From positions 19,096,001 to 19,160,000 of the forward strand of contig CM097884.1 in the NCBI GenBank assembly GCA_044892505.1: 64,000 bases of DNA. The letters run 5' to 3'. Positions 3,001-60,500 of this stretch are shown here, piece after piece. The stretch comes from Schmidtea nova (Eukaryota). Numbering within the stretch: the first letter of the stretch is position 1; each line of letters starts with the position of its first letter. The notes under the pieces are model-generated. The model did no database searches, was not told the origin of the DNA, and saw only the letters and a list, made by a program, of their open reading frames with translations. The translations under genes and the position numbers were made by a program.

Positions 3001-3107
3001 ATCATTCACACAATCACAATCATTAAATTCCATACATACATTGCTCAAAATATTACTTACATTTAATTTATTGCTCCAACCACTTCTCCTTGTGATGGAG
3101 CATATCC
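1..3107 (-). CDS. pol: pol polyprotein (PR-RT-RH-IN), entered by -1 frameshift; one 1-nt frameshift at about 2597; partial at window edge
   Basis: The -1 frame is open from the slippery site through the protease ORF 2590..3048. After a 1-nt shift in a T5 run (IIVF|YVTNGVIPKMIGG) the frame is open with no stop to position 1 (FNRMPFGIAAAPATFQ, VVYLDDILIF, FILDTDASF, HRTLCHAG, SPYHHSANGVIER). The ORF track omits it, presumably because it lacks a stop in the window. Confidence 0.9.
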
Positions 3108-4118: not shown

Positions 4119-4349
4119 ATTAGGTTGATTATTAATTTTCTTATACATAAATTGAAAACACGCTTTCGTTCAAAAATATATATTATTAAAACAAATATTT
4201 TTCTTTTTTTTAATTATCTTGGAGAATATATATATTAATATAAATAATACTTTGAGCAATTTCAACATTCATACACAACATATACATACTGTTACACTCA
4301 TACTGATTTTTATAATATATAATTAATTTATCAATTTCATCTCACAACT
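4118..4349 (-). repeat. 5' LTR of Gypsy element 1 (about 230 bp)
   Basis: Begins AGTT at 4349, exactly where hAT transposase sequence resumes, and ends at the PBS. The partner LTR is outside the window, so the 3' boundary is inferred. Confidence 0.7.
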
Positions 4350-6467: not shown

Positions 6468-7135
6468 AAAATACCCATTCGAAATTGTTTGAAAAAATGA
6501 TGAATTTTGATGAACAAGGCATTATGGTCAATAATATTCACTCCATCATTTTGAATATTCTTAACATTATTTGTAAACCAATTTTCTATGAACTTATAAT
6601 TAAATCACAGTTATGTCCGCGTCATGTTGAGAGGTATTTATTATTTTATTTTCATTTCACTACCTTTGTCAAATGATTTTGAACACTCAAGAAAGCATTA
6701 CCAAGAATTTGTGATAAATATTAAATAATGGTCTCTAGTCGAAAAAGAAATTAAGATGTTATTAATGTTCATACTTGATATTTGTCTTATACCGTTAATA
6801 ATGACATGGTGAATAAAGAATTTAAATGTAGCTGGTAATTTAATATTTTAACTTGATATCCTATTTGATTCGTACCCTATTCAAATAAAATCATAGTACT
6901 CTAATGATAATTACCATAAGGAATTATATTGAGGCATCGACGATAAAAGGTAGGATTTTATGTTGATTGTATAATGAACTTTTGCAATAATTTTTAATAT
7001 TCCTATAATTTAAATGCAAAATTTATTATAGTATGTAAAATTTATTTATAAAATTTGATTGCTTTTTATTAATTTTTTTGTTTTTATTATGTTTTATTTA
7101 TTTAAAACTTTAATATATAATTATTCTTCTAACTG

Positions 7136-7262
7136 TCATAATTATCTTTTTGTTTCACCTTTGATCTTTTTTTATATTAATATCAATAATTCCCATAATG
7201 GTAAGACTATAGATCAAAATTTCTTTAAACAAGTACACAATATTTCGGCACAGCATTATCAA
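7136..7262 (-). mobile_element. Penelope pseudo-LTR/terminal fragment next to a gap
   Basis: Reverse complement matches 44852-44975 (ttgataa..gctgtgccgaaatattgtgt...gataattatga). Confidence 0.8.
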
Positions 7263-8165: not shown

Positions 8166-10047
8166 ATGAAGAGTCGGGGGGCAAAAAACTCGTCCACCTA
8201 CGGCGGACATTCAGGAGGTAAACTTACAAGCAACTGAAAGGAAAGAATTATTCGGTTTTGAGAAAAACCCCAGATATCGTAACATCAATAAAATTAACAC
8301 TAATCAACCAAATACTCCTTCAATACCAACATCAACATCAAATTCCCAATCATCTTCATTTGTCACATCTACTCCCATTGTCCCATCAAAATCAACTATC
8401 CTGTCAACTTCAACTGTCCCATTAACATCAACTATCCCATCAACATCAACTGTACCATCAACATCAACTATCCCATCAACATCAATTATCCCATCAACAT
8501 CAATTGTCCCGACATCCTCAAAAGTCCTATCAACTTCAAATGTCCCATCAACTTCAATTGCCCCATCAACTTCAATTGCCCCATCAACTTCAATTGATCC
8601 ATTAACATCAATTGTCCCATCAACATCAACATCAACTGACCCTTCAACATCTACTACTCCTACAACTTCTACTGCTCCTTCAACCTTAACTACTCCTTAT
8701 TATCTTCTCTTTCAACACTTATCTTCTTTATCTGCTCTCTCAACACCAACTGCACCTTCAACATCAAATACTCCCACAACGTCGAATACTCCTTCAACAT
8801 CTACTGTGCCTTCAACATCTACTGCTCCCTCAACCTCTACTGCTCCTTCAACATCAAGCGCTTCTTCAACATCAAATGCCCCTACATCCTCAGAAGATAC
8901 CTCAACACCAAAAAACACCTCAACACCAAATGCCCCTTCAACATCAAAAGCTCCTTCAACATCAAATACTTCTCCTACATCTAATGCTTCTCCTACATCT
9001 TATGCTTCTCCTACATCAAATGCTTCCTCAACATCAAATGCTTCTTCAACACCAAAGGCTCATCCAACTTCAATCACTCCTTCAACATCTACTGTGCCTA
9101 CAATATCTACTGCTCCCTCAACCTCTACTGCTCCCCCAACATCCACTAATCCTGCAACATCTACTAATCGCTCAACATATAAACAACCAAAAAATATCTT
9201 CATCTTCGGTTCTACACCCTCAAATCCTACAAATCTTTCATGTAACACTAATACCCACAAATACAACACCAGATTGAATACTAAAATTATCACTCTCCCA
9301 GATGAAGAACAGACCGCTTCCTATTACAGAACTTATAATCCAACACCCTCCGAAAAAAGAAAGCCATTAGAAATATTTAAAATCATCCATAAAACTCTAA
9401 TTTTCTGGGATATCTTTAACAAAAATAAAAAACTCACCACTAAGGATATTTACTTGATGAATGAACCAACAATTGAAGACCTGATAAATCACTATATCAT
9501 TTTTTTCTCTTCCCCTCCATTTCACCTAGATAAATCAAAAACATTCCAAGTTATTCATAATGATATATACAACTGGCTCCCTGCCCTAGAAAAATGTGGA
9601 ATCACAGACTACCTTATGCTTTGCAACTTATCAACAAACGACATGAATAAACTTAATTTTGAATACGACAATGAAAGTACCCAATCACAAAAAGACCTCA
9701 GTGAATTTGCAGAAAAATCCATGTTCAAAACTACCCAAAAACCTAAAGAGAAAATTTATGCATCAGTTAGCATTATAGACCTTATGTATGACATCTCCAA
9801 ATTGAAAAATATAATGATTGATAATGAAGAAGAAAGACTTTCAATATCATACTGCAAACCTTCCACTTGGTTCCCTCTCTTATGCATCTACGGTGACGAC
9901 TACCAAGAGCTCCTGGAAATATCAAATTCTGAACTCATTAAAATGCTGATTAAAGCCCAAACCTTTCATAGAGAAAGTCATTTTGTATCAATAGACCCTA
10001 CAGAAGATGACCTAGATAAAATTATGAGTGCATACTCCCTGCTCTAA
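8166..10047 (+). CDS. orphan intronless ORF: Pro/Ser/Thr 6-aa (18-nt) repeats plus about 270-aa unknown C-terminal domain
   Basis: Frame 1 is open from 8170 to TAA at 10045-10047 (about 625 codons; the ORF track starts only at GTG 8806). The nearest ATG (8166) needs a 1-nt deletion in the G6/A6 run to join the frame (MKSRGQKTRPP...). Strong A/C strand bias. Confidence 0.6.
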
Positions 10048-37390: not shown

Positions 37391-38656
37391 GTTTTTTCCG
37401 TCTTCTCTCAATGTAGTATATTTTTCAGGAACATTGTATCTATCTGCCATATCGCTGTGAGCCATTCTGAAATCATGGCTGTTTTCGGTGTAATCTCTTC
37501 TTTCAGATTTGGAATCTTCTTCTTCTATGCAGGCTATTCTTTGATATCGACGGGGCACCTCTTTCCGTAACGAAAAACAATCTCGGAATCCGTGTCCCTC
37601 TTTACCACATATCAGGCATTTATTTCCCAGTGGGCACTCATATCTTTTGTGTCCCCTTTCGCCACAGCAAAAACAATCACCTACTGTTAATTTTGGAGCC
37701 GGTGCTTGTGGTAGTCCTCTACTTTCGTTATAAATCTTTCTTGCTATATTCTTCATGGAAATTGTTGGTAGTTTCCTTTCTGAGCAATCTTGGATTCTAA
37801 CATTTCTCAAAAATTGTTCTTTTGGGAATTGTTCTCGTCGACCGCGGTTATTTTCTTCGAATTGTATCGGATGTTCATCTCTTCTTGGTCTGTGATGACT
37901 AAATGGGTCTTCTGATTGTCTTCTTTGTGATGGTGTAGGTCTGGTATCTTGAGTATTCTGTTGAATTCTCATTTGCCCTCCATCAATCACGCTGGCATAT
38001 GTTCTTTTACCAATTGATTTAATAAATTCAGTTTTATTGCTTCCCTTTTGGTTACTCTCAAAAATCTTCGCCATTGATCTCGTTTCTTCAATTTTTGTTT
38101 CTGGTTTTGTCAATAATATCTCCTTCAATCTCGCATCGCGTGCTTTATTTGCGATGAGATCTTGAACAATATCTTCTTCTGATCATCCTGAATTTATGAC
38201 TTCAGCTAAAGCTTTCCTTAATCGAATCTCGAAAGCTGCAAAACGTTCATCATCTTCCTGTTCCAGAACTGCCAATTCTCTGATTTTGTCAGTTATTGAC
38301 TTCGTAATTGTGAAAGTATTTAGGAACCAAGTTTTGGCTTTCACGTCTGTTGTTTCTGTTTCTCTGACGTTTCCCCACAATGTCTTAGCTTCTGCCACTA
38401 ATAACACATCGAAGGTGCTTGTCAATCGCTGTCCATTTGTCAACAGCCATTCTTCTATGTCTCTGATCCATTCTTCTGCTTCTTTCGATCCTCGTCCATC
38501 ATATCGTCTGATATTCAGCGTGAGCATATCTTGGCATGATTTTGGTAGGCATTCCATTAACGTCTTTGTTGATTTCGAAACTGCATTGACATTCTGATTT
38601 TCGGCGTGGTCGCCAGTTAAATCAAACTCGGTTTTAAAAGACTGAACTTCCTTCAT
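37343..38656 (-). pseudogene. gag: gag of element 2, one in-frame TGA at 38183-38185
   Basis: ORFs 38183..38656 and 37343..38128 are in the same frame; knuckles CFCCGERGHKRYEC and CLICGKEGHGFRDC. Confidence 0.9.
37353..37397 (-). promoter_or_regulatory. -1 ribosomal frameshift signal of element 2
   Basis: A AAA AAC (37397-37391) in the gag frame, 6-nt spacer, hairpin GACTCCA...TGGAGTC. The -1 frame reads without a stop into ATG 37295 of pol. Confidence 0.85.
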
Positions 38657-39089: not shown

Positions 39090-42000
39090 ATGAATCATTC
39101 AATGCATATCATGAAAGATGCTATGAAGAATCAGTCGGTTCATAAATGCAATCATTCAATGCATCAGTCAATGAAACACGGAGCTGCTGGATCTAATCAC
39201 AGCGGAATGACAGTACTTTTATTAATTTCTTGTAATTATTTTCCAGTAAATCTAGATGTATTTCAATATGGCCAATCCATTTTATCTATTTCTTAAAGAA
39301 TTATTTATTACATCTAATGGAGGTTTGTTAATGAATTCTTCTTATTTTAATTTTATTGTTATTTATTATTGTTTTATTATTGATAAATTCATATAACATT
39401 TAGCTATTTGCGGCGGCGCGATCGTTCTGTTTGTTTTAACAATCTTTTATGAAGGACTGAAAGTAAATTTTTAAATAATTAATAAATGATAACTAAATGC
39501 AAATTTTGATCACTTATTATTGTGTGTTTTCCACGTTTGAACTCAAATAAAATCATAGTGCATAATTGGTCTATTTAAGTTATTAAGCAAATCCTTCGAG
39601 TGAATAATTCAATTGTAGTTATGAAACAAAAATTATATTTGTAAACGAAAGACAATCAAGAAAATATTTTGAATAGCATTGAAATCATTTGTTGACAATT
39701 AGAAAGAATTACTTCACTGTATGAGAAAAAGGGACAATAAAATTTAAATTGATTAAAAATGTTGGTAAAATGCAATTTGTTGTAAATAGACTGCGTGTGC
39801 GAAGTACCGAAACTACTAACATTTTAATCTCGACCGGAATACCCATTTCTTTCCTAGCAATGCCACTCAACACAGCTGGAAAAACTAATTCAAAGATGTA
39901 TGGAAATGGTTCTATTATTCTAACCACATTCTCCACTTGTACGACTTTGATCCTTATTATTTATTTTATCTTTATGAAATTCCATTTCAGAAGGGAATTC
40001 ATTAAAACAGTAATTTATTATATTGTCTCATACCACTTGTCGTAGGAATTTTTGGTATTTCCGGCGCTCGTTCGACCATCACGTCAGTACAGAAGAAATG
40101 TTGCACCGGTCCCTGACACACTTAAAAATGACATGGATGAATGATTTAAATTTCATTTTATGTTATTCTTGAAATTACACAACAAAAATTATATATATTA
40201 CTCATATTACGAACAATATCCTTAGAACGAAAACTAAAGGACATAATATTACGTAACGGAACCTACTCCAAACGTTGCCAGGAGCTACAACAATTAGACG
40301 AACAGTGACACTGAACATTTGAAAACATTCAAACTTGGAAAACTAATTACATTTAAAAATAATAATAAATTCTCAATTTACATTTATTGTTACTTGATTG
40401 TCATTAATTAGACATATCGGGAAGTTCTGCTATATCAGAAAATCAGAAAGAATCGTAAATATTTAATAAATGAAAGCATTACGCCGTCGACATTGTTGAA
40501 TGAAAACCATCACGATATTACACCAGCGGGGGATGCTGAGATAATTACACCTAATAATTCATCAGGCACTTTCAGATTGTAAGGATATTTCATTTTCAAT
40601 AAATGTTTAATATATTATCGGTAGTTATATTACATTTTATTTTTATTTTGTTTTTTTCTTAATTTAATTTTTCTTTTATTATTTTCTTCTTATAATATTT
40701 TTTGTTAATTTTATTTTTAAAAATATTTTTCTAATTATTAAAAAATTTTTAATATTAATTTTTTTCTTATTTTTGTTTATTATTATTAAATTATTATTAA
40801 TAATTATTATTGTTAATTTTATTTTTTCTTATTTTTATAATTATAAATTTTCTTATTATAAATTTTTTTATTAAATTAATTTTTATTATAAATTATATTC
40901 GTATATTTATTGTTAATAATTTTTTATTATACATTTTTTACTAATTATTATTAATTTTATTCTTATTTTTATTTATTTCTTGTTATTCTTATTTTTTCTT
41001 TGTTTCTTATTATTAAATTTTTTTAATATTATTATATAACATAATAGCTTCAATTATTAAATATTAAATAATTATGTCAATTGTTATTAATTTTATTTGT
41101 ATTTTTTATATAATTATTATTTTTAATATTATAATTAATTATAATTAACATTCTTCTATTTTTAACATGTTCTATTTTCTTTTTCTGAAATTTTCATTTT
41201 CTCTCTTGATAATGTGCTGAAAATTTTGATTGTAATTATATTTGATTTTAATAAAATCAGTGATTTATTCTCATTAATGTTTTGCATTACTAGTAAATTA
41301 ATTATTATTCTNNNNNNNNNNNNNNNNNNNNNNNNNNNNNNNNNNNNNNNNNNNNNNNNNNNNNNNNNNNNNNNNNNNNNNNNNNNNNNNNNNNNNNNNN
41401 NNNNNNNNNNNNNNNNNNNNNNNNNNNNNNNNNNNNNNNNNNNNNNNNNNNNNNNNNNNNNNNNNNNNNNNNNNNNNNNNNNNNNNNNNNNNNNNNNNNN
41501 NNNNNNNNNNNNNNNNNNNNNNNNNNNNNNNNNNNNNNNNNNNNNNNNNNNNNNNNNNNNNNNNNNNNNNNNNNNNNNNNNNNNNNNNNNNNNNNNNNNN
41601 NNNNNNNNNNNNNNNNNNNNNNNNNNNNNNNNNNNNNNNNNNNNNNNNNNNNNNNNNNNNNNNNNNNNNNNNNNNNNNNNNNNNNNNNNNNNNNNNNNNN
41701 NNNNNNNNNNNNNNNNNNNNNNNNNNNNNNNNNNNNNNNNNNNNNNNNNNNNNNNNNNNNNNNNNNNNNNNNNNNNNNNNNNNNNNNNNNNNNNNNNNNN
41801 NNNNNNNNNNNNNNNNNNNNCTATTTCTGAAATTTTCATTTTCTCTCTTGATAATGTGCTGAAAATTCTGATTGTAGAATTTGGATCAATTCATTTGTTT
41901 TCATATTTAATTGAATTTGAGGATCTGGAACTCCATATTTTTTTATATCAAAATGTTTTTTATCCTTAGGATGCTAAGAAATTTCAATGAAATTGTCTGT

Positions 42001-42124
42001 TGTTAAATCTCCCTTATGAATTATTTCCACTTGTACGCTTTCGGGAGTGATTATTTCTTTACTGACTTAGTTACAGTAGGAACTATATTATTGCTCTTTA
42101 TTCTATCTGCCGATTCTAATTTAG

Positions 42125-42190
<66 letters not shown>

Positions 42191-45100
42191 CAATAATTCT
42201 CATAATGACTATAGATCAAAATTTTTTTTATAAACAATAACACAATATTTCGGCACAGCCTTTATCAAGTGTGTATTTCTATCGTTATATTTACTTAATC
42301 CTAAATAGTAGCCTTAATTATTTTTTTAATATTTTATAATGATTTTATTGGATGAAAAAATTTATTTTATTTTAATTTTTTTGTGCGAATTGAATGTTGA
42401 TGGACGGTTTGTATTTTTTTATGAAAAAAGTCTCGGAAGCTAATCTTTGTAATGAATTTTTGAATCCCTCTTGTAGGATCTGGCATTTTGTTTCTTCTAT
42501 AGATGGAGTTGTTTTATGTACTTTTTCCCAGTGTTCGTAATAATTACTGGTTTTGATTTTAGTATGTTCATTAAGTCGGGTGCGAAAAGTTCTATGTGTT
42601 TCTCCTATGTAAGTAGCGTCACATTTTTGACAAGAAAGTTTATATACTATATTTTTGGAAAAGCAAAAGCATCGGGTTGTGGAACGACAAAGACATTTAT
42701 GTTTGGAGATGTTGGAAATTGGTGGCTTTCGGAGTTGTGATTTTAACGGTGCGGAGGTTATGAACGTTGGACGGATGTGGATAGGCAAATCTGTTTGATT
42801 AAAAATGTTGGTGATTTTGTTGGCTGTAGTGTCATTTAGGAAAGGTAATCTTAGATATGTTGTGTGTTTGTTATTGTTATTGTGTTTCTGGCGTTTTCTA
42901 TTGTTGCGTTTATTGTGGTATGGTTCGTTAAGGAAGTGTTTCTTTACAAAGTCTTCAGGGTATCCATTTTGGAGGAATCGTATTTTGAAGTTTTCTAGTG
43001 TTTCTTGTATTTTGTTTGCGTCTGAACAGTTTCTTATGGCTCTTTTTCTTTCTCCTATTAGTAATGCGATTTTGCGTTGAAGTGGAACGTGGCTTTTCCA
43101 TGGGAGGATATGACCGCTATGTAAACCTTTAGAATATAGCTCGGTGTTTGCATTTAGTGTATCTTGGCCTTTTGTAAAACTTACCATGGTATCTAAAAAC
43201 GGTATTTTACCTTCTGTGTTCGGTGTTTCAAAAGTAAATTGTATGTTGGTGTTAGTAGAATTTGCGTGTGATAGGATTTGATTGAGAGGGATTGTGGAGA
43301 CTATGAAGATGTCGTCGATGTATCGTTTCCAGAAAAGTATTTTGTCCCCAAAAAAAGATATGATCTTAGATTCTATAAAGTTCATGTAGAAGATGGCTAA
43401 GATGGGAGAAAGGTTATTACCCATGGCTAATCCATGAATTTGTTTGAATGGTTTTTCTTTAATTATGACAGTATCTGAATTTATTGCTAATTTTAGAAGT
43501 TCTATAAAGTCTTGTTTAGTTAAGTCTGCGAGGTCAGTGTTGGCTTTATGAGTTTCAAAGAAAGAAGCTGCGATATCGAAAATGTTATTCTCTCCGTGAA
43601 GAGGAATAGATCCGTAAAGATTGGAAACGTCAAGCGATCCCCAGAAGTACTGTTGTCCTGAGTTTAACGGAAGAGACGTATTTGTAATTTCGGAGACGAA
43701 TTCAGTTGTGTTTTTAAGATGAGAAGGAACCAAAGGCAAAAATGTTTTTAGAATTTCTGAAAGAACTTTAGAAAGTGTTGTGGAAGGAGTGTCAACTGCG
43801 GATACAAGAGGTCTACCTTTTAAAGGACTTTTGTGATCTTTAGGTAACATAGTCATATTACTAGGTAAAGGCTCACTGCAGTTGCATTTTAAAAGTAAAT
43901 CTTTGATTTGAAGGTTAATTTGTTTATTTGCAAGTGTTGAAAGTTTCTTATTGTATAAAATCTGAGTCGATGCAGGTAAGATTATTTTGTTTATCGGTTC
44001 ATAGTTCGAGAGATGTTCTTCAAATAGAGTATTGTATTGTTCTGTGTCAAGAGCAATTAGTCGATTTGTTTTATCTGATGGAAGAATTGTGAAGTCTTTG
44101 GAATTCTTAATTTTCTTTATGTTTGAAGTGAAGGAATTTTGTGTTGAGCAATGTTTTTCAAGAAAGATAATTTGTTCTCTGACTAAAGTTTTGACTTTAG
44201 TTTCTAAACAGCTGAGTTTTTCTTCAAGTTCAGTCGAAAAGACATGCATATTTGGATATGTTCTACGATTTGGATCCAGAAGATGATTGTGCTTTTCAGC
44301 TAAACTTGAAGATTTGGTGGATGAAATTGGTTTTAGATGGTATCCTATTTGTCTTCTTAGGCTTATAAGAGAGGCGTTAGTGATGATTTCGGCTTTTTCT
44401 AAATCTTTCTGGTTAGGTGGAGGAACAAAAGATGGTCCTAGAGCGAGGATGTTTTCTTGTGTTTTTGAAAAAATGTGATTAGATTTGTTTGTAAATGGAA
44501 GAATTGAATTTGAGTGTGAGTTAGTGTCTTTACTAAAATCTTTACTAAAAATCTTTACTAAAATCAAAACCAGTAATTATTACGAACACTGGGAAAAAGT
44601 ACATAAAACAACTCCATCTATAGAAGAAACAAAATGCCAGATCCTACAAGAGGGATTCAAAAATTCATTACAAAGATTAGCTTCCGAGACTTTTTTCATA
44701 AAAAAATACAAACCGTCCATCAACATTCAATTCGCACAAAAAAATTAAAATAAAATAAATTTTTTCATCCAATAAAATCATTATAAAATATTAAAAAAAT
44801 AATTAAGGCTACTATTTAGGATTAAGTAAATATAACGATAGAAATACACACTTGATAAAGGCTGTGCCGAAATATTGTGTTATTGTTTATAAAAAAAATT
44901 TTGATCTATAGTCATTATGAGAATTATTGATAATAATAATAAAAAAAGATCAAAGGTGAAAAAAGATAATTATGATAGTATATTGGCGGACGCCCATCAC
45001 CGAGTAGATCTATCGTTATTTTATAGTCTCAAAATCATCAAAATCAAATCACACTTACATTTTTTAAAAGAATGCAAAAGAAGAAACATCATTCCCGTGG

Positions 45101-48100
45101 GCCTGACTGTTACCAACAAACTGGAATCAACCTATCCATCTTTACAAGCATTGAAGCTTAAAGAAAAACAGGAAAAAGAATGGCTTAAGCTTAGCATTTC
45201 AGCTTGTTACAAAAAGCTAAACGAATTTACTAGTTTTCCTTGTGCTCCTCTTACTTGTGAAGATAATACTTGTTGCCAGAATTTCTCCAAAAATCTCGAC
45301 ATTCGCAAGCATAAAAAATTAGAAAAGCTACTTTCAACAAATTCAAACAACACTAAAGACACTAACTCACACTCAAATTCAATTCTTCCATTTACAAACA
45401 AATCTAATCACATTTTTTCAAAAACACAAGAAAATATCCTCGCTCTAGGACCATCTTTTGTTCCTCCATCTAACCAGAAAGATTTAGAAAAAGCCGAAAT
45501 CATCACTAACGCCTCTCTTATAAGCCTAAGAAGACAAATAGGATACCATCTAAAACCAATTTCATCCACCAAATCTTCAAGTTTAGCTGAAAAGCACAAT
45601 CATCTTCTGGATCCAAATCGTAGAACATATCCAAATATGCCTGTCTTTTCGACTGAACTTGAAGAAAAACTCAGCTGTTTAGAAACTAAAGTCAAAACTT
45701 TAGTCAGAGAACAAATTATCTTTCTTGAAAAACATTGCTCAACACAAAATTCCTTCACTTCAAACATAAAGAAAATTAAGAATTCCAAAGACTTCACAAT
45801 TCTTCCATCAGATAAAACAAATCGACTAATTTCTCTTGACACAGAACAATACAATACTCTATTTGAAGAACATCTCTCGAACTATGAACCGATAAACAAA
45901 ATAATCTTACCTGCATCGACTCAGATTTTATACAATAAGAAACTTTCAACACTTGCAAATAAACAAATTAACCTTCAAATCAAAGATTTACTTTTAAAAT
46001 GCAACTGCAGTGAGCCTTTACCTAGTAATATGACTATGTTACCTAAAGATCACAAAAGTCCTTTAAAAGGTAGACCTCTTGTATCTGCAGTTGACACTCC
46101 TTCCACAACACTTTCTAAAGTTCTTTCAGAAATTCTAAAAACACTTTTACCTTTGGTTCCTTCTCATCTTAAAAACACAACTGAATTCGTCTCCGAAATT
46201 ACAAATACGTCTCTTCCGTTAAACTCAGGACAACAGTACTTCTGGGGATCTCTTGACGTTTCCAATCTTTACGGATCTATTCCTCTTCACGGAGAGAATA
46301 ACATTTTCGATATCGCAGCTTCTTTCTTTGAAACTCATAAAGCCAATACTGACCTCGCAGACTTAACTAAACAAGACTTTATAGAACTTCTAAAATTAGC
46401 AATAAATTCAGATACTGTCATAATTAAAGAAAAACCATTCAAACAAATTCATGGATTAGCCATGGGTAATAACCTTTCTCCCATCTTAGCCATCTTCTAC
46501 ATGAACTTTATAGAATCTAAGATCATATCTTTTTTTGGGGACAAAATACTTTTCTGGAAACGATACATCGATGACATCTTCATAGTCTCCACAATCCCTC
46601 TCAATCAAATCCTATCACACGCAAATTCTACTAACACCAACATACAATTTACTTTTGAAACACCGAACACAGAAGGTAAAATACCGTTTTTAGATACCAT
46701 GGTAAGTTTTACAAAAGGCCAAGATACACTAAATGCAAACACCGAGCTATATTCTAAAGGTTTACATAGCGGTCATATCCTCCCATGGAAAAGCCACGTT
46801 CCACTTCAACGCAAAATCGCATTACTAATAGGAGAAAGAAAAAGAGCCATAAGAAACTGTTCAGACGCAAACAAAATACAAGAAACATTAGAAAACTTCA
46901 AAATACGATTCCTCCAAAATGGATACCCTGAAGACTTTGTAAAGAAACACTTCCTTAACGAACCATACCACAATAAACGCAACAATAGAAAACGCCAGAA
47001 ACACAATAACAATAACAAACACACAACATATCTAAGATTACCTTTCCTAAATGACACTACAGCCAACAAAATCACCAACATTTTTAATCAAACAGATTTG
47101 CCTATCCACATCCGTCCAACGTTCATAACCTCCGCACCGTTAAAATCACAACTCCGAAAGCCACCAATTTCCAACATCTCCAAACATAAATGTCTTTGTC
47201 GTTCCACAACCCGATGCTTTTGCTTTTCCAAAAATATAGTATATAAACTTTCTTGTCAAAAATGTGACGCTACTTACATAGGAGAAACACATAGAACTTT
47301 TCGCACCCGACTTAATGAACATACTAAAATCAAAACCAGTAATTATTACGAACACTGGGAAAAAGTACATAAAACAACTCCATCTATAGAAGAAACAAAA
47401 TGCCAGATCCTACAAGAGGGATTCAAAAATTCATTACAAAGATTAGCTTCCGAGACTTTTTTCATAAAAAAATACAAACCGTCCATCAACATTCAATTCG
47501 CACAAAAAAATTAAAATAAAATAAATTTTTTCATCCAATAAAATCATTATAAAATATTAAAAAAATAATTAAGGCTACTATTTAGGATTAAGTAAATATA
47601 ACGATAGAAATACACACTTGATAAAGGCTGTGCCGAAATATTGTGTTATTGTTTATAAAAAAAATTTTGATCTATAGTCATTATGAGAATTATTGATAAT
47701 AATAATAAAAAAAGATCAAAGGTNNNNNNNNNNNNNNNNNNNNNNNNNNNNNNNNNNNNNNNNNNNNNNNNNNNNNNNNNNNNNNNNNNNNNNNNNNNNN
47801 NNNNNNNNNNNNNNNNNNNNNNNNNNNNNNNNNNNNNNNNNNNNNNNNNNNNNNNNNNNNNNNNNNNNNNNNNNNNNTTTCATTAATTTTTTGCATTGCT
47901 AGTAAATTAATTATTATTTTATTNNNNNNNNNNNNNNNNNNNNNNNNNNNNNNNNNNNNNNNNNNNNNNNNNNNNNNNNNNNNNNNNNNNNNNNNNNNNN
48001 NNNNNNNNNNNNNNNNNNNNNNNNNNNNNNNNNNNNNNNNNNNNNNNNNNNNNNNNNNNNNNNNNNNNNNNNNNNNNNNNNNNNNNNNNNNNNNNNNNNN

Positions 48101-51100
48101 NNNNNNNNNNNNNNNNNNNNNNNNNNNNNNNNNNNNNNNNNNNNNNNNNNNNNNNNNNNNNNNNNNNNNNNNNNNNNNNNNNNNNNNNNNNNNNNNNNNN
48201 NNNNNNNNNNNNNNNNNNNNNNNNNNNNNNNNNNNNNNNNNNNNNNNNNNNNNNNNNNNNNNNNNNNNNNNNNNNNNNNNNNNNNNNNNNNNNNNNNNNN
48301 NNNNNNNNNNNNNNNNNNNNNNNNNNNNNNNNNNNNNNNNNNNNNNNNNNNNNNNNNTTTCATTAATTTTTTGCATTGCTAGTAAATTAATTATTATTTT
48401 ATTNNNNNNNNNNNNNNNNNNNNNNNNNNNNNNNNNNNNNNNNNNNNNNNNNNNNNNNNNNNNNNNNNNNNNNNNNNNNNNNNNNNNNNNNNNNNNNNNN
48501 NNNNNNNNNNNNNNNNNNNNNNNNNNNNNNNNNNNNNNNNNNNNNNNNNNNNNNNNNNNNNNNNNNNNNNNNNNNNNNNNNNNNNNNNNNNNNNNNNNNN
48601 NNNNNNNNNNNNNNNNNNNNNNNNNNNNNNNNNNNNNNNNNNNNNNNNNNNNNNNNNNNNNNNNNNNNNNNNNNNNNNNNNNNNNNNNNNNNNNNNNNNN
48701 NNNNNNNNNNNNNNNNNNNNNNNNNNNNNNNNNNNNNNNNNNNNNNNNNNNNNNNNNNNNNNNNNNNNNNNNNNNNNNNNNNNNNNNNNNNNNNNNNNNN
48801 NNNNNNGGATGACTTATTTGTTTTTAACAAGTAAAGCTTGTGATGCTTTGTGATACCCAGTGCAAATCCCCAATAGCAGACTAGTTTCGAGCATTTTGCT
48901 CTCATCAGTGCTATGCAGGAGACGCGAAAATTTCTCTCCGCGCCAGGCAAGTATAAAACAAAGTCGAAAGATTTTTGTTTTATACTATACCTGGTACACT
49001 GGATAAAACATCACTTGAATATGCAAGGTCCTACAGATAATCTGTAACTTGCAAACATGGCGTATGAATTTCATTTTCACCTCTGCGCACTAAAAGTGTT
49101 CAACAGAAACTTTTTGCAAGCGCACCCGACTGCCTTAGCTTCATTATTTCAATTTTCGCGTCTCCTGCATAGCACTGATGAGAGCAAAAAGCTCGAAACT
49201 AGTCTGCTATTGGGGATTTGCGCTGGGTATCACAAAAAATCACAAGCTTTCCTTATTAAAAACAAATAAGTCATCCGACAAATGTTTTTTTCAAAAGATA
49301 TTTCAAGTAATTTGCCTATCCACATCCGTTCAACGTTCATAACCTCCGCAGCGTTAAAATCACAACTCCGAAAGCCACCAATATCAAACATCTCCAAACA
49401 TAAATATCTTTGCCGTTCCACAACCCGATGCTTTTGCTTTTCAAAAAAATATAGTTTATAAACTTTCTTGTCAAAAATGTGATGCTACTTACATAGGAGA
49501 AACACAGAAATTTTCGCATCCGATTTAATGAGCACACTAAAAACAAAACCAGCAATTATAACGAACACTGGAAGAAAGTACATAAAATAACTCTATCTAT
49601 AGATTAACAAAATGACAGATTCTACAAAGAGGGATTCAAAAATTCATTACAAAGATTAGCTTCCGAGACATTTTACATTAAAAAAATACAAACCACTCAT
49701 CAACATTCAATTCGCACAAAAATATCATGTTTAAAAAGAAAATTAAAATAAATTTATTTTCATCCAATAAAATCATTATAAAATATTAAAAAAATAATTA
49801 AGGCTACTATTTAGGATTATGTTAATATAACGATTGTATTACACATTTGATAAAGGCTGTGCCGAAATATTGTGTTCTTATTTAAAGAAATTTTGATCCA
49901 TAGTCTTACCATTATGGAAATTATTGATATTAATATTATTAATATTTTTATTATTATTATTAATTAATATTGTTAATATNNNNNNNNNNNNNNNNNNNNN
50001 NNNNNNNNNNNNNNNNNNNNNNNNNNNNNNNNNNNNNNNNNNNNNNNNNNNNNNNNNNNNNNNNNNNNNNNNNNNNNNNNNNNNNNNNNNNNNNNNNNNN
50101 NNNNNNNNNNNNNNNNNNNNNNNNNNNNNNNNNNNNNNNNNNNNNNNNNNNNNNNNNNNNNNNNNNNNNNNNNNNNNNNNNNNNNNNNNNNNNNNNNNNN
50201 NNNNNNNNNNNNNNNNNNNNNNNNNNNNNNNNNNNNNNNNNNNNNNNNNNNNNNNNNNNNNNNNNNNNNNNNNNNNNNNNNNNNNNNNNNNNNNNNNNNN
50301 NNNNNNNNNNNNNNNNNNNNNNNNNNNNNNNNNNNNNNNNNNNNNNNNNNNNNNNNNNNNNNNNNNNNNNNNNNNNNNNNNNNNNNNNNNNNNNNNNNNN
50401 NNNNNNNNNNNNNNNNNNNNNNNNNNNNNNNNNNNNNNNNGTTGATTAATTAAAATTTGTAATTTCTTTAAATTATTTATATTAAATTTTTCTTAAATAA
50501 TAATTATTGGAAATCATTTTATTGGGACCTAACCAATCAACAATTTGTGCCTGACTTATAGATCAATGATAAAGTGAGGAGTGCAGAATGTGTCAACAAT
50601 TGTTGCGAATGTATTACGCTGTGTTATTTAATCAGGTAGAGTCATGATTATCGCGTTAATATCGTGATCAGTCGATCTCAAATATGCTCAAATATTTGTT
50701 TAATCAACCGGGAAATTTCTGCCAATAAAAATTTTTTTGTTTGTAAATCGTGACAATTCCATTTCATAGTTATATAATTGCTAGTTCAAGGAAATTTATA
50801 TATTTATCGATCTTTCTCTGTTCTTTTATGCTATAAAATGCCGTTTATACTATTAATTTACATGATTATTCTTCATTATTAGTTCTTTAGTCTATCATTA
50901 ATTCTAGGTCCATTTGAAATATATCTTTGGAAATGAGTTGAAATGAAATATTTTTTTAATCTTGATTATACAGCATATATTTCTCGATTACCAATTCTTT
51001 AGAAAATTTATTCTTTTTTGTATTTTTCTTCAAGTCGCAATATTACAATTTATTTCTGTAACATGCGCTTTATTAGTGTTTGTTTTATTTTATTTTCTCC

Positions 51101-51262: not shown

Positions 51263-54200
51263 TAATACCTTGCTTTGCGACAATAACTGCTTTCCATAAA
51301 AATCGCAATTCGAAATAAACTTATGGAATTGTACTAAAATACGAAAGAATCCTGAATTTAAAAATCTGTTTACCCAAAAACAAGGTAATTACAAGTTATT
51401 AATACAAGTTTATTTATTAATATATAGCAAAATAAAACGTAACAATTCTTTAAAATACAAAATTCAATTTGTTTATCAATAATATTCTAGGAACTATACA
51501 TAAACATTAATTATCAAGAATCAGAATCTAACACTTGTGGCTGCAAATATCTTTCTAGCGTTTGCTGGATTGTTATTTTTTTTTCGTTCTACACAACTGA
51601 TAAAGGCTGTGCCGATATATTGTGTATTTATTTAAAGAAATTTTGATCTATAGTCATCCATTATGGGAATTAGTGATATTATTATTATTAATATTATACA
51701 AAAAAAAGCTTGTGATTTTTTTTGTGATACCCAGTGCAAATCCCCAATAGCAGACTAGTTTCGAGCTTTTGGCTCTCATCAGTGCTATGCAGGAGACGCG
51801 AAAATTTCTCTCCGCGCCAGGCAAGTATAAAACAAAGTCGAAAGATTTGTGTTATATACTATACCTGGTACACTGGATAAAACATCACTTGAATATGCAA
51901 GGTCCTACAGATAATCTGTAACTTGCAAACATGGCGTATGAATTTCATTTTCACCTCTGCGCACTAAAAGTGTTCAACAGAAACTGTTTGCAAGCGCACC
52001 CGACTGCCTTAGCTTCATTATTTCAATTTCTTGAAATATCTTTTGAAAAAAACACATTTGTCGGATGACTTATTTGTTTTTAACAAGTAAAGCTTGTGAT
52101 GCTTTGTGATACCCAGTGCAAATCCCCAATAGCAGACTAGTTTCGAGCTTTTGGCTCTCATCAGTGCTATCTGTATTATCTGTAGTATTATCTGTAGGAC
52201 CTTGCATATTCAAGTGATGTTTTATCCAGTGTACCAGGTATAGTATATAACAAAAATCTTTCGACTTTGTTTTAGACTTACCTGGTGCGGAGATAAATTT
52301 TCGCGTCTCCTGCATAGCACTGATGAGAGCCAAAAGGTCGAAACTAGTCTGCTATTGGGGATTTGCACTGGGTATCACAAAAATAATCACAAGCTTTTTT
52401 TTGTTTAAAACAAATAAGTCATCCGACAAATGTTTTTTTCAATTATTAATATTGTTTTTATTATCTTTGTAGCAACTTATATCATCAATATATATTGAAC
52501 AACTTTTGTACTTCTTTTTTTCGTCAAGGTCATTTTGTCCAAAAATCGAAGTGACTTCATTAATAACAGCCATAGCTTTACTAATTTGTTTTAGAGGTTA
52601 ATATTTTTGGCTCAGGAGTTTTTTTGGATTTTCCACTAAGTTGTCTTTGTATTACAGTTCAAGATCTAGTTCCATCAAATCGTCATGTCATCATTTTGTG
52701 TTAAAATAAACTTGTTAACATCGACTTCATTCATTCCTTCAAATTCATTTGCTTCTGTACAGGTATCATCAATATAACCGATTTCATTTGAGTTAGTTTT
52801 TTTCGAACACACTCAGGCCAGATCTTCCTCCAAACACGATTCATGCAGGATGTTTATACGTCTTTCCATGATTCTGCAATATTATTCACTACATACATTA
52901 CATTATATTTTTTTACCAAAAACTGGAATTTCACTTTTTGCTAACAAAATATTATACAAAATTAATATTAACACTGTAACTGATATTTTCTTTAAAGAAA
53001 ATTTTTCTTTCAATTTTTTGCGTCGGAATATGAAAAGACGCAAATTGAAACGTCGCAAATATCTCTCTCTCTCATGCAAAGTTAATTATAAATAAATAAT
53101 ATAATTATAGAAGTGCATTGTAAAAATTAAAGATATTGGTTTGAAATTATATTAAAGTGCAGTTTTTTATAAAATTAAACTAAATTTTGTGTTAATTATT
53201 TCTATTGTCAAAAGATTTTAAGTTTACTGACAAAAACTAAATTATACTGACCAAATATCTAAAATGTAAGTTATGACTGACCCTTAATTGTTATTACTGA
53301 TCAAAATATTACTCTGTACTGGTAAAATATTTAATAAAATACTGACCGTTTATTATAAAAATTACTGACCAAATAAAAAGAAATGATTATAAAATAAATC
53401 TTTAAAAAATATTATTAATACGATATTTGAGAGAGATGCCTTTAACATATTTCAACAATATCTCGTCTAATGATTGATATACCGGCGCTCCTTTATCCTT
53501 CTAAATTTGTAAGCCTTTCTAGTTAATGTTGAGAAGCCTAGGTCACATAAATATTATGTCAAAAATGGTAATAAAACTTTGAGTACTCTTGTGAATAGAG
53601 TGAATTTTCGACTTGGATAGAAATCCAAAATTCCTCAAGAGTTTTTTCTGAAAATTTTATTTTTATAGTACGATCCGTTGACAAGGAATTTAAATCTTGT
53701 TCTTCCTGTAACAAAAATCCTCAACTCGATATATCAGTTATTATGCTAAATGGATTTCGCATCTAATCATAATTATTTATCTTCAATAAAAGTATCTAGC
53801 AATTTTTTCCAAAATTAATAAATGCTTTAGATTGGTAAATATACTGATAATAATTCCCTTAATATCTTTATAATTAAGCGAAGGTTTGGTTATTAGTGAA
53901 TTTGCTGGTAAATAACAATGATCTAGCTCTAGAGTTTCCATTTCCCGTTCGTTTCTGTAACCATTCAATCCCGGGAGTTGTTTATAATAATTGTTTTTAT
54001 AATAAATAAACAAAAATAAAATTGTATTTTTATCACATGAATTCGTCAAAACTTAAAATATCATTTAATAATGTCGAAAAGTTTAATAATTAATCGTTTT
54101 TTTCCATATTTAATAAAATATGTTTTTACGAAATATGAAAAATTTAGTGAATAATCTTAATGCGTGGTCTTCTTTTCGTAGGAAATGATCCCACAATTGA

Positions 54201-57200: not shown

Positions 57201-57460
57201 AGAATATTGTTTTACACCTCAGTTCGAGTACTTATTGAACTCACCATGTAAATGTATTTTATAGATTTCCTTTATGTTAAAATTGCAACAGTTGATTTTT
57301 ATCGTTTTTTCGACTTTTGGTGAATATTTTTTTAAATTTAACCAAAATCGACAGTCGCAATAAATAAATTGAAAAGAAATTGAAAAAAGATCAATGGTGA
57401 TTGAACTAGAACATTTTACTTAAACACTTAATTAGCTTACTTTATGGTTCTATATAAAAG

Positions 57461-57520
<60 letters not shown>

Positions 57521-60500
57521 TCATAATTATCTTTTATCACCTTTGATCTTTTTTTATTATTATTATCAATAATTCTCATAATGCTGACTATAGATCAAAA
57601 ATTTTTTTATAAACAATAACACAATATTTCGGCACAGCCTTTATCAAGCCGCCCCGGACATCTAAAATTAGCAATAAATTCAGATACTGTCATAATTAAA
57701 GAAAAACCATTCAAACAAATTCATGGATTAGCCATGGGTAATAACCTTTCTCCCATCTTAGCCATCTTCTACATGAACTTTATAGAATCTAAGATCCTAT
57801 CTTTTTTTGGGGACAAAATACTTTTCTGGAAACGATACATCGACGACATCTTCATAGTCTCCACAATCCCTCTCAATCAAATCTTATCACACGCAAATTC
57901 TACTAACACTAGCATACAATTTACTTTTGAAACATCGAACACAGAAAGTAAAATACCGTTTTTAGATACCATGGTAAGTTTCACAAAAGGCCAAGATACA
58001 CTAAATGCAAACACCGAGCTATATTCTAAAAGTTTACATAGTGGTCATATCCTCCCATGGAAAAGCCACGTTCCACTTCAACGCAAAATCGCATTACTAA
58101 TAGGAGAAAGAAAAAGAGCCATAAGAAACTGTTCAGGCGCAAACAAAATACAAGAAACATTAGAAAACTTCAAAATACGATTCCTCCAAAATGGACACCC
58201 TGAAGAATTTGTAAAGAAATACTTCCTTAACGAACCATACCACAATAAACGCAACAATATGAAACGCCAGAAACACAATAACAATACAAAAACACAACAT
58301 ATCTAAGATTACCTTTCCTAAATAACACTACAGCCAACAAAATCACCAACATTTTTAATCAAACAGATTTGCCTATCCACATCCGTCCAACGTTCATAAC
58401 CTCCGCACCGTTAAAATCACAACTCCGAAAGCCACCAATTTCCAACATCTCCAAACATAAATGTCTTTGCCGTTCCACAACCCGATGCTTTTGCTTTTCC
58501 AAAAATATAGTATATCAACTTTCTTGTCAAAAATGTGACGCTACTTACATAGGAGAAACACAGAACTTTTCGCACCCGACTTAATGAACACACTAAAAAC
58601 AAAACCAGTAATTATTATGAACACTGGAAGAAAGTACATAAAACAACTCCATCTATAGAAGAAACAAAATGCCAGATTCTACCAGAGGGATTCAAAAATT
58701 CATTACAAAGATTAGCTTCCGAGACTTTTTACATAAAAAAATACAAACCATCCATCAACATTCAATTCGTACAAAAAAATTAAAATAAATTTTTTCATCC
58801 AATAAAATCTTTATAAAATATAAAAAAATAATTAAGGTTACTATTTAGGATTAAGTTAATATAACGATAGAAATACACACTTGATAAAGGCTGTGCCTAA
58901 ATATTGTGGTATTGTTTAAAAAAAATTTTGATCTATAGTCATCATTATGAGAATTATTGATAATAATAATAAAAAAAGATCAAAGGTGAAAAAAGATAAT
59001 TATGATTATATATATATATATATATTGGAGAAAGAATGAGTCTTTAGTGTCTGACTCAAAAGAATAATTTCTTTCATTTTCCTAATCACGCACGCAAGCT
59101 TTAAATTTCATGTTATTATAGCCTTTCTGCTCTTCTTTTCTTATTAAAAAAAAATTACGTAAATTATTTTCACCATTACCGCATATTAAAAATTTATCTC
59201 TTAGTAAGAATTCTTATCATTGATAACCAAATTATCCTCAAGAAAATCATTGACCTGATTTATTCGCTATTTCTTGGTTCTTCTCTGAATATTATATTCA
59301 ATTGCGTGATTAATCTCAAATTCATCTGTCAAATGAATTATCTTGTAAAAGTTCTCTTCTATAATTGACATAGCATCCTAATTGATTGGCATTAGCTCCA
59401 TTTGTGTCTCTTTAAAATGTTTCTAGATTACTCATTGTGGCTTCTATATAACTGCTTTTCTTTATTACAATAATTTCTTCAGTTTTTTCTTAGGATTTCG
59501 CATTTTCGTAAATTTTGGCAAAGTTATTACGCTTTTATGGTGCCATTATTGTTTTTGTTGTTATTGCGTCTTTTAATCTTTTCTCTTTGACTCGTCCGAT
59601 TATAATTTCTCATATAATCTCAGATGGTTATAATCTCATACAACTTCATCCACTAGTTTTATTTTCATTTTGTCTGATTGTAGTAAGTCCTTTAATCTTT
59701 ACCAACATGGTTAACTTTATAGTAAATGTTTCGGTAAACCATTTTTTTATCAGTTGTTTTCACACTTTTAAAAATTTTCTGTGACTGTTTCATCGCGAGG
59801 TTAAAATCGAATGCTTCTGTTCATTTTTCGTCATTCTAGAAATCTAATCATCGATAGCTTGTATCCATTTTTCAGCTTCTTTGGATTATCTGCCGTTATA
59901 TCTCCTTATTCCTATATATAAGAGTTCCTGAGCTCTTTTTGGTTGAGTGTCTCTTGCTGATCTTTTTCCATCTCGTCAAGTCGTCATTGTGTGTAAATTT
60001 ACGGCGTGGTTGCAAGTTAAGACACTTGAATTCATCTGTAAAATTGATTAAATATTGAAATCTGAAACCAATTAAATTGCATCCAAACACTTTGTTTGGA
60101 TTATCTATTAAAAATAAAATAGATAGTTCTCTAGATGAAACATCATAACTTATAATAATAAGATACGTGATGCGTTTACAAAGTTCCTGGTCCCAAGTAT
60201 AGAATTAAAAAATAAATACTTAGTCATTTATAATTTTAAAGTTGTCATATAAGTATAAGTGAAGAAAATTAAATTTGTTTTACTCGGTCATTGTTCTTTA
60301 TCATAATAACGCTAGAGTTTTGAAAAATTGATAAAGTCATGATTTCACCAATCAAATATTGAAGTGTGATTTAATAATTTATCAATTGTGAAAAATTGGG
60401 TAAATGCATTCGAATGTAGTCGCATATTAGTCTTTGATAACTACAGAGAAAGTGGGTCACATGAAATTTGTGACAATATATGCGAAAAGTTGCTAAAAAA

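What the first reader, a model, noticed from the sequence alone, without database searches (positions are those of the whole stretch)
48807..49935. Retrozyme-Penelope chimera points to the mobilising partner
Seen: the + strand retrozyme piece (49155-49307, with an intact hammerhead) runs directly into a 5'-truncated Penelope 3' end (49309-49935). An inverted retrozyme piece lies to its left, the same inverted-5'-end geometry as the pure Penelope insertions here. The second cluster also abuts a pLTR fragment (51591-51700). Inference: the Penelope RT switched template between its own RNA and the retrozyme RNA, which would be direct genomic evidence that this PLE family mobilises the retrozyme in trans.
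Basis: partly seen in the sequence, partly recalled or inferred. Interest (0 to 1): 0.78.

Follow-up and report, generated by a model that had tools for sequence, protein, structure and literature searches.

The report
Retrozyme joined to Penelope fragment
A small ribozyme-carrying repeat (a retrozyme) lies directly against a truncated Penelope retrotransposon; the junction is in the sequence as described, but it could be a copy-choice hybrid or simply one element inserted into the other, so it hints at who mobilises the repeat without proving it.

Summary
A 382-nt non-coding hammerhead repeat occurs twice in the window, each time as a head-to-head inverted pair. In cluster 1 the + arm (49151-49307) runs, after two extra bases, into a 5'-truncated Penelope 3' end (49310-49946).

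Three things are new. (1) The 3' end of the + arm and the 5' end of the inverted arm are exactly adjacent positions of the repeat. That is the twin-priming signature: two primers on one multimeric retrozyme RNA, the right-hand primer being a Penelope DNA end. (2) Cluster 2 has its own 12-nt target-site duplication inside the AT-rich tail of an older Penelope fragment, so it is a nested insertion and not a chimera. (3) Retrozyme insertions share Penelope's architecture and, in cluster 2, its AT-rich target.

Decay counts favour nesting; target composition and orientation favour the switch. The deciding left flank lies under an N run. That Penelope-like elements mobilise animal retrozymes was already proposed in 2020 and 2026. 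Moderate interest.

The parts
48807..49155 (-). Cluster 1, inverted retrozyme arm (c1L). Its sense 5' end is at 49155; its 3' end is hidden under the N run 48404-48806. Hammerhead at 48857-48926.
   Evidence: 97% identical to 51705-52029; alignment A2; hammerhead core.
49151..49155 (.). 5-nt microhomology (AATTT) shared by both arms at the inversion junction.
   Evidence: Overlap of the two BLAST matches; sequence; A2.
49151..49307 (+). Cluster 1, + retrozyme arm (c1R) with hammerhead 49156-49227 and cleavage site 49204/49205. Its 3' end (49307) is the unit position immediately before the 5' end of c1L.
49308..49309 (+). Two junction bases (TA) templated by neither partner; alternatively one mismatch followed by a 4-nt microhomology.
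   Evidence: Alignments A1 and A2.
49310..49746 (+). Remnant of the Penelope ORF 3' part (linker plus GIY-YIG endonuclease region), 5'-truncated. Broken gene: 5 frameshifting indels and no premature stop in the projected frame; 92% identical to the intact ORF.
49747..49946 (+). Non-coding 3' end (terminal repeat region) of the same Penelope piece. It belongs to the older subfamily shared with 7132-7262 and 51590-51695.
49947..49979 (.). 100% AT flank after the Penelope 3' end, then the N run.
51590..51695 (+). 106-nt 3'-terminal Penelope fragment of the older subfamily. Its AT-rich tail is the target of retrozyme cluster 2.
51684..51695 (.). Left copy of the 12-nt target-site duplication ATTATTAATATT of cluster 2.
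51698..52170 (-). Cluster 2, inverted retrozyme arm (c2L): 1.23 units with two hammerheads (51731-51800 and 52128-52170).
52171..52186 (.). 16-nt filler at the inversion junction; it repeats the adjacent 11 nt.
52187..52442 (+). Cluster 2, + retrozyme arm (c2R); hammerhead 52314-52355 with a mismatch in helix II.
52442..52453 (.). Right copy of the 12-nt target-site duplication of cluster 2.
42175..44532 (-). Inverted 5'-truncated Penelope arm (731-aa ORF), 99.5% identical to 45354-47711; its outer end lies in a (TAA)n tract.
44556..47723 (+). Penelope copy with terminal repeat (44556-44957 equals 47322-47723) and the intact 865-aa ORF 44917-47514 (RT plus C-terminal GIY-YIG). It runs into an N run.
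57513..59013 (.). Second Penelope head-to-head pair: 57513-57648 (-), 9-nt filler, 57658-59013 (+). It sits in a (TA)n microsatellite.
19418..19580 (.). Third Penelope head-to-head pair of short terminal pieces: 19418-19518 (-) and 19519-19580 (+).
7132..7262 (-). Terminal Penelope piece of the older subfamily, 93% identical to the piece in the chimera; its inner end is under an N run.

Best explanation
Both retrozyme clusters are insertions made by a Penelope-type, two-primer reverse transcription. The two DNA ends of one cut target each primed cDNA synthesis on retrozyme RNA, and the two cDNAs were joined head to head. In cluster 1 both primers used one multimeric retrozyme RNA. The arm primed from the left stopped exactly where the arm primed from the right had started, which is twin-priming geometry. 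The right-hand primer was the 3' end of Penelope DNA. By a small margin, I think that DNA was most likely an older, already resident, 5'-truncated or split Penelope copy. On that reading the 'chimera' is a nested insertion, as cluster 2 demonstrably is. Shown: the coordinates, the exact contiguity, the microhomologies, the target-site duplication of cluster 2, and the shared architecture. Inferred: that the template was RNA, that a Penelope-like enzyme did the work, and that the Penelope piece was resident.
For: Contiguity: the 3' end of c1R and the 5' end of c1L are adjacent unit positions; chance is 0.003 for exact adjacency and 0.013 within 2 nt. There is a 5-nt microhomology at the inversion junction. 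Cluster 2 proves that this retrozyme inserted into pre-existing older-subfamily Penelope DNA with its own 12-nt duplication (p about 1e-4 at random positions, about 0.02 among AT-rich flanks). Decay: the older-subfamily Penelope fragments carry more private substitutions than the retrozyme copies (9/208 against 2/398, p = 0.0016). The ORF remnant next to c1R has 5 frameshifting indels, 4 of them private, against none in about 510 nt of c1L plus c1R (p = 0.04). This reading needs no step beyond those that made cluster 2. The junction is not at a ribozyme-made RNA end.
Against: The flank that would be the target is 55% AT, whereas all nine other visible outer flanks of Penelope arms and of cluster 2 are at least 85% AT. 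The retrozyme arm and the Penelope piece share an orientation, which a nested insertion gives only half the time. The upstream half of the Penelope copy that this model requires is not visible; it would have to lie in the 403-nt N run. One of the five frameshifts is shared with another copy, so dead Penelope RNAs were probably copied too, which weakens the age argument.
Confidence: 0.38

Rival explanations
1. One integration event used two templates. The right-hand target end primed on Penelope RNA at its normal 3' end in an AT-rich tract and copied 637 nt. The nascent cDNA end then annealed inside the retrozyme RNA that the left-hand primer was already copying, and continued on it.
For: The order and orientation are those of a template-switch chimera. 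The composite's right flank is 100% AT, like every other Penelope target here, while the retrozyme/Penelope junction itself is 55% AT. The junction has two extra bases, or a 4-nt microhomology. The exact contiguity of the two retrozyme arms shows the right-hand primer used the same RNA as the left arm. Penelope insertions here regularly have two arms that both start at the element's 3' end, which suggests two templates per event.
Against: It needs one more step than a nested insertion. The Penelope piece is more decayed than the retrozyme arms, unless a dead transcript served as template. The acceptor site is internal, 103 nt past the hammerhead cleavage site, not an RNA 3' end as in end-to-end template jumps. 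The retrozyme and the Penelope terminal repeat show no similarity. This is one case only, and cluster 2 is nested, not chimeric. The piece belongs to an older subfamily than the 865-aa ORF copy.
Confidence: 0.32
2. The composite was formed elsewhere and arrived here as a unit. Either a nested locus was transcribed through and copied via the Penelope 3' end, or the segment was duplicated at the DNA level.
For: Penelope terminal repeats are reported to suffice in cis for mobilising unrelated sequence lying upstream of them (PMC3846280). The piece keeps a complete Penelope 3' end in an AT-rich flank.
Against: There is no second copy of the junction in the window, and no relatives were found in public collections. 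The inverted arm with exact contiguity would have to be carried along or made anew.
Confidence: 0.08
3. Misassembly. The 1173-nt island between N runs joins reads from separate retrozyme and Penelope copies.
For: The contig is short, flanked by gaps, and lies in a region with duplicated 46-nt islands. Penelope tandem/inverted structures are known to confound short-read assemblies (PMC8557442).
Against: The two repeats share at most 4-5 nt at either junction, so there is no shared k-mer on which a graph assembler could cross over. The inverted arms differ at 5% of positions, unlike a fold-back artefact. The same inverted-pair architecture occurs in cluster 2 within 13.5 kb of gap-free sequence.
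Confidence: 0.07
4. The order was the reverse. The retrozyme pair was there first, and a 5'-truncated Penelope later inserted into the AT-rich flank on its right, with its 5' junction landing on the retrozyme boundary.
For: The Penelope 3' end is in a typical AT-rich target. Cluster 2 shows that retrozyme pairs are flanked by such tracts. Penelope 5' junctions without target duplication are reported (PMC3846280).
Against: It needs the 5' junction within 2 nt of the retrozyme end with no target sequence left between. There is no duplication of the flank. The Penelope piece looks older, not younger, than the retrozyme arms.
Confidence: 0.05

Closest known systems
Animal non-LTR retrozymes (Cervera and de la Pena 2020, PMC7229834; Li et al. 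2026 preprint, 10.64898/2026.07.22.740005)
   Same: A non-coding unit of a few hundred nt with one type I hammerhead (6-bp helix I, 4-bp helix II, short palindromic helix III). The monomer is strongly self-paired. It has target-site duplications longer than 4 bp and co-exists with Penelope-like elements, which both papers propose as the mobilising partner.
   Different: Here there are at most 1.23 tandem units, always as head-to-head inverted pairs rather than long arrays. There is no detectable similarity to the local Penelope terminal repeat, unlike the Xenopus families of the preprint. Units within one arm are not identical, which argues against rolling-circle copying of a monomeric circle. 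Expression and circularity are unknown.
L1 twin priming (5' inversion of LINE-1 insertions; reviewed in PMC2912911 and PMC4476161)
   Same: The inverted 5' segment and the direct 3' segment are contiguous in the template, with a few nt of microhomology at the inversion junction.
   Different: The enzyme is presumably a GIY-YIG Penelope-like element, not an L1. In Penelope's own pairs and in cluster 2, both arms start in the element's 3' region instead of one starting internally.
U6/L1 and other LINE chimeric retrocopies (PMC4476161, PMC2104539, PMC6789731)
   Same: A small non-coding RNA copy is fused in the same orientation to a variably 5'-truncated autonomous element that keeps its own 3' end.
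   Different: In U6/L1 the junction is at the 3' end of U6, and RtcB ligation of a 2',3'-cyclic phosphate end is a demonstrated route. Here the junction is 103 nt past the hammerhead cleavage site, so neither an end-to-end jump nor ligation at the ribozyme-made end fits. A single target duplication around the whole cannot be checked.
Penelope trans-mobilisation of unrelated sequence next to terminal repeats in Adineta vaga (PMC3846280)
   Same: Foreign sequence lies directly upstream of a Penelope 3' terminal repeat. The paper also reports inverted arms, AT-rich targets, microhomology junctions and nested Penelope-in-Penelope insertions.
   Different: There the cargo lies between two direct terminal repeats inside one duplication. 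Here only the 3' part is present, the cargo is itself a mobile hammerhead repeat, and cluster 2 moved without any terminal repeat inside its duplication.

Membership tests
Animal non-LTR retrozyme | Type I hammerhead with conserved core, about 6-bp helix I, 4-bp helix II and short palindromic helix III | tested here: met
   All five copies keep both core strands. Helices are seen in the cmscan alignments and folds. One copy (52314-52355) has a helix II mismatch. The architecture matches that described in PMC4209133.
Animal non-LTR retrozyme | Reaches the curated Rfam score of a hammerhead family | tested here: not met
   There are no hits at gathering score. The best are 31.9 bits against 34 for Hammerhead_1 and 24.1 against 52 for HH9.
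Animal non-LTR retrozyme | Unit of 170-400 nt in head-to-tail tandem copies | tested here: inconclusive
   The 382-nt period is seen once (51721/52103). The longest arm is 1.23 units, and there is no array in the window.
Animal non-LTR retrozyme | Non-coding and highly self-paired monomer | tested here: met
   The longest ORF is 87 aa and crosses the inversion junction. The monomer cut at the cleavage site folds at -122.8 kcal/mol, z = -5.65.
Animal non-LTR retrozyme | Expressed as self-cleaved linear and circular RNA | not testable with these tools
   No transcript data for this genome were available.
Endonuclease-bearing Penelope-like element | Single ORF with RT and C-terminal GIY-YIG endonuclease | tested here: met
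   RVT_1 scores 32 bits against a 29.6 cut-off. The C-terminal 215 aa align (E = 6e-22) with the end of P0011, which carries PF01541, including both GIY-YIG motifs. Pfam itself gave no GIY-YIG hit on this ORF.
Endonuclease-bearing Penelope-like element | Pseudo-LTR from partial tandem, adjacent inverted 5'-truncated copy, optional 30-40 nt tail | tested here: met
   44556-44957 is identical to 47322-47723. The inverted arm 42175-44532 is 99.5% identical. Several arms run about 40 nt past the point where others end. These are the features listed in PMC8557442.
Endonuclease-bearing Penelope-like element | Insertion into AT-rich simple sequence | tested here: met
   Flanks are (TAA)n, (TA)n and other tracts of at least 85% AT.
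Endonuclease-bearing Penelope-like element | Canonical or minimal hammerhead in the pseudo-LTR | tested here: not met
   There is no hammerhead hit at E up to 10 in 44400-47723. Only a hammerhead-like motif with a departing first core strand is present, and its fold is not better than shuffles.
Template-switch chimeric retrocopy | Partner RNA copy 5' of a 5'-truncated autonomous element, same orientation, element's own 3' end kept | tested here: met
Template-switch chimeric retrocopy | Junction at the 3' end of the partner RNA | tested here: not met
   The junction (49307) is 103 nt downstream of the hammerhead cleavage site (49204/49205). Cluster 2 reads through the same unit position without a break.
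Template-switch chimeric retrocopy | One target-site duplication around the whole composite | not testable with these tools
   The left flank is under the N run 48404-48806.
Template-switch chimeric retrocopy | Both parts of equal age | tested here: inconclusive
   Private indels are 4 against 0 (p = 0.04). Private substitutions are 2/68 against 2/259 (p = 0.19). A dead template would mimic greater age.
Twin-priming type inversion | Inverted and direct segments contiguous in the template; microhomology at the inversion junction | tested here: met
   Cluster 1 shows adjacent unit positions and a 5-nt overlap. Cluster 2 does not: its arms overlap by more than 100 unit positions and have a 16-nt filler.

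The most novel reading that the evidence does not exclude
Cluster 1 is the footprint of a single hybrid integration in which a Penelope-like enzyme complex held a Penelope RNA on one target end and a retrozyme RNA on the other. The Penelope cDNA then jumped onto the retrozyme RNA. That would be the first direct genomic trace of a Penelope-like reverse transcriptase copying an animal retrozyme, and evidence that Penelope integration normally handles two templates at once.
Probability: 0.32. Interest if true: 0.65.

Novelty: new member of a known kind. Interest (0 to 1): 0.42.

Why it matters
Which enzyme mobilises animal retrozymes is an open question. Penelope-like elements have been the favoured candidate since 2020, on co-occurrence and, in frogs, on sequence kinship. 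In the papers I could search I found no junction-level analysis of retrozyme insertions. This window adds anatomical evidence: retrozyme insertions here have Penelope's unusual head-to-head two-arm architecture with junction fillers or microhomology, and in cluster 2 also its AT-rich target and a target duplication. One junction may record the enzyme moving between the two RNAs. If a genome-wide census confirmed co-oriented junctions, the partner question would be answered from sequence alone. If not, this locus remains an ordinary nested insertion in a transposon-rich region.

Tried and rejected
1. Looking for more of this genome or for relatives of the retrozyme found nothing. The exact 865-aa product is not on record and its best protein relative is 45% identical. 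Pattern scans of viral contigs and of metagenome contigs gave no match. So enrichment against chance could only be judged inside the window.
2. Kinship of the retrozyme with the Penelope terminal repeat: local alignment scores were no better than shuffles on either strand. In that script the monomer was extended in memory by its own first 120 nt to mimic the natural tandem; nothing was saved.
3. A hammerhead in the Penelope copy or in its nearest relative's contig L001: none found.
4. PDB sequence search with the ORF: no hit.
5. RNA ligation of a ribozyme-cleaved retrozyme end to Penelope RNA (the RtcB route known for U6/L1, PMC6789731): rejected, because the junction is not at the cleavage site.
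6. Fold-back assembly artefact: rejected, because the arms differ by 5%.
7. Rolling-circle copying of a monomeric circle: unlikely, because the overlapping parts of one arm and of paired arms are not identical.
8. A linear monomer RNA with fixed ends at the junction position: rejected, because cluster 2 reads through that position.
9. Organism identification was not pursued. C-terminal-endonuclease Penelope-like elements point to an animal (PMC8557442); GC content is 29.8%.
I list no positions of breaks.
11. Slip: while reasoning I recalled generic hammerhead core strings from memory. Every pattern sent to a tool was copied from letters shown.
Full report
THE WINDOW. The window is AT-rich (29.8% GC) and has nine N runs. 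It is crowded with mobile elements: a Ty3/gypsy-like pol, a pogo/Tc5 transposase, a hAT transposase and several copies of one Penelope-like element. The best Penelope copy (44556-47723) has an intact 865-aa ORF. That ORF has a reverse-transcriptase domain (RVT_1, 32 bits). Its C-terminus aligns with the GIY-YIG end of a relative that carries PF01541 (E = 6e-22). It has a pseudo-LTR (44556-44957 is identical to 47322-47723) and, immediately upstream, an inverted 5'-truncated arm (42175-44532) that is 99.5% identical. Two more loci show the same head-to-head arrangement: 57513-57648/57658-59013 and 19418-19518/19519-19580. This is the published architecture of these elements (PMC8557442, PMC3846280).

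THE RETROZYME. A 382-nt unit (period 51721/52103) carries one type I hammerhead. All five hammerhead cores in the window lie in this repeat: five matches against 0.00 expected. They have a 6-bp helix I, a 4-bp helix II and a short palindromic helix III. That is the canonical animal type I design as described in PMC4209133. None reaches an Rfam gathering score (best 31.9 against 34 bits). The unit is non-coding. Cut at the cleavage site, it folds far better than shuffles (-122.8 kcal/mol, z = -5.65). It fits the animal non-LTR retrozymes of PMC7229834, except that there is no long array here.

- Cluster 1 consists of an inverted arm c1L (48807-49155), a + arm c1R (49151-49307), two extra bases, and a 5'-truncated Penelope 3' end (49310-49946).
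- The Penelope piece starts in the linker before the endonuclease domain.
- Its ORF remnant (49310-49746) is 92% identical to the intact ORF and is broken by five frameshifting indels, with no premature stop in the projected frame.
- Its non-coding end groups it with two other fragments (7132-7262 and 51590-51695) in an older subfamily, distinct from the 865-aa copy.

FIRST NEW POINT: CONTIGUITY. In unit coordinates, c1R ends at the position immediately before the one where c1L begins. The two arms overlap by 5 nt (AATTT) at the inversion junction. Chance gives 0.003 for exact adjacency and 0.013 within 2 nt. Unrolled, the two arms are one continuous stretch of at least 508 nt of a multimeric retrozyme whose 5' part has been flipped. 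This is the signature of twin priming in LINE-1 insertions. One primer copies the RNA from its 3' region. A second DNA end anneals further upstream on the same RNA. The first cDNA stops where the second began. The second primer here was the 3' end of the Penelope minus strand at 49310. So the question narrows to whether that Penelope DNA was resident chromosome or nascent cDNA.

SECOND NEW POINT: CLUSTER 2 IS NESTED. Its pair (c2L 51698-52170, a 16-nt filler, c2R 52187-52442) is bracketed by an exact 12-nt duplication, ATTATTAATATT (51684-51695 and 52442-52453). Such a match occurs at about 1e-4 of random positions and at about 2% of equally AT-rich ones. The Penelope fragment 51590-51695 lies outside that duplication, and its 3' end faces the retrozyme's 3' end. 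It therefore cannot be an arm of the same event. The retrozyme inserted into the AT-rich tail of a pre-existing fragment.

THIRD NEW POINT: SHARED HABITS. Retrozyme and Penelope insertions resemble each other in several ways.
- Both form head-to-head arms with their 3' ends outward.
- Both have short fillers or microhomology at the inner junction: 23, 9 and 0 nt for Penelope; 16 nt and a 5-nt overlap for the retrozyme.
- All nine visible outer flanks of the Penelope arms and of retrozyme cluster 2 are at least 85% AT, against a window mean of 70%.
- The three visible retrozyme 3' ends fall 55, 92 and 103 nt after the cleavage site, a 49-nt span of the 382-nt unit (p about 0.05). This hints at a preferred priming region, as Penelope arms have.
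- No LINE-type RT ORF of 100 aa or more was seen in the window.
This is independent, if circumstantial, support for Penelope-type mobilisation. That idea was already proposed in PMC7229834 and in the 2026 preprint 10.64898/2026.07.22.740005.

NESTED INSERTION OR TEMPLATE SWITCH?
For nesting:
- Cluster 2 shows that it happens here.
- It needs no step beyond those of cluster 2.
- The older Penelope fragments carry more private substitutions than the retrozyme copies (9/208 against 2/398, p = 0.0016).
- The ORF remnant has four private frameshifts, against none in c1L plus c1R (p = 0.04).
For the switch:
- The orientation is the required one, which is a 1-in-2 chance under nesting.
- The flank that would be the target is only 55% AT, an outlier among the flanks, while the composite's outer flank is 100% AT.
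- The junction has two untemplated bases, or a 4-nt microhomology.
Weakening the age argument: one of the five frameshifts is shared with another copy, so defective Penelope RNAs were probably copied too.
Weakening the switch: the acceptor site is internal to the retrozyme RNA. It is not the ribozyme-made end that an end-to-end jump or an RtcB ligation (PMC6789731) would use. The retrozyme also shows no similarity to the Penelope terminal repeat.
I rate nesting 0.38, the switch 0.32, a composite imported from elsewhere 0.08, misassembly 0.07 and reverse-order insertion 0.05.

MISASSEMBLY. The finding lies on a 1173-nt island between N runs, near duplicated 46-nt islands. However, neither junction shares more than 5 nt between the joined repeats. 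The arms differ at 5% of positions. The same architecture appears in gap-free sequence in cluster 2. I therefore think the junction is real.

WHAT COULD NOT BE DONE. The left flank of c1L, which would settle the matter, is under the N run 48404-48806. No further sequence of this genome or of related retrozymes could be found, so genome-wide enrichment is untested. Inside the window Penelope-derived DNA is 13% of the bases. Two random insertions would both touch it with probability of about 0.02, but a shared preference for AT-rich tails explains at least cluster 2.

VERDICT. The locus is a new example of known kinds of element and event, with one reading that would be a first. The descriptive substitutes are the hidden flank, a junction census and presence/absence alleles.

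Noticed in passing
window 47611-47650, and the same place in every Penelope terminal-repeat copy (e.g. 49851-49890, 51596-51635): A conserved hammerhead-like motif: short helix I, 3-bp helix II, a GAAA strand and a palindromic helix III stub. Its first core strand departs from the canonical one. There is no Rfam hit and the fold is not better than shuffles. It could be a variant or a relic of the pseudo-LTR hammerhead reported for other Penelope-like elements.
   Followed up: partly
window 47878-47923, 48358-48403 and 41271-41309: Two identical 46-nt islands stand between N runs, and a 95% similar copy lies left of the Penelope pair. There is also a repeated stretch at 41165-41230 and 41821-41875. 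Together they suggest a host tandem repeat of roughly 480-650 nt that the Penelope pair and cluster 1 interrupt, and they show how fragmented the assembly is here.
   Followed up: partly
window 15098-15227: A near-palindromic stretch matches the MIR8742 model on both strands at 66-67 bits, well below the gathering score of 130. It is probably a hairpin-forming repeat or a miniature transposon rather than that microRNA.
   Followed up: no
window 49310-49746 and 57658-59013: One frameshifting indel of the Penelope ORF remnant in the chimera is shared with a separate, younger-looking copy. This suggests that defective Penelope transcripts were propagated in trans.
   Followed up: partly
window 42121-42198 and 57460-57512 / 59014-59026: Penelope pairs sit in (TAA)n and (TA)n microsatellites. 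In the second pair (TA)n flanks both sides, consistent with the reported microsatellite bias of these elements.
   Followed up: yes
window 2590-4148, 13310-14449, 23667-25719, 34234-38656: Other mobile elements: a gag/protease-like ORF pair, a pogo/Tc5-type DDE transposase, a hAT transposase in two ORFs, and a Ty3/gypsy-like protease-RT-RNase H and integrase in separate ORFs. The 413-aa ORF at 8806-10047 has no Pfam match.
   Followed up: partly
window 52320-52344: The hammerhead of arm c2R has a mismatch in helix II and folds no better than shuffles, yet it is the copy that scores highest in Rfam (31.9 bits).
   Followed up: partly
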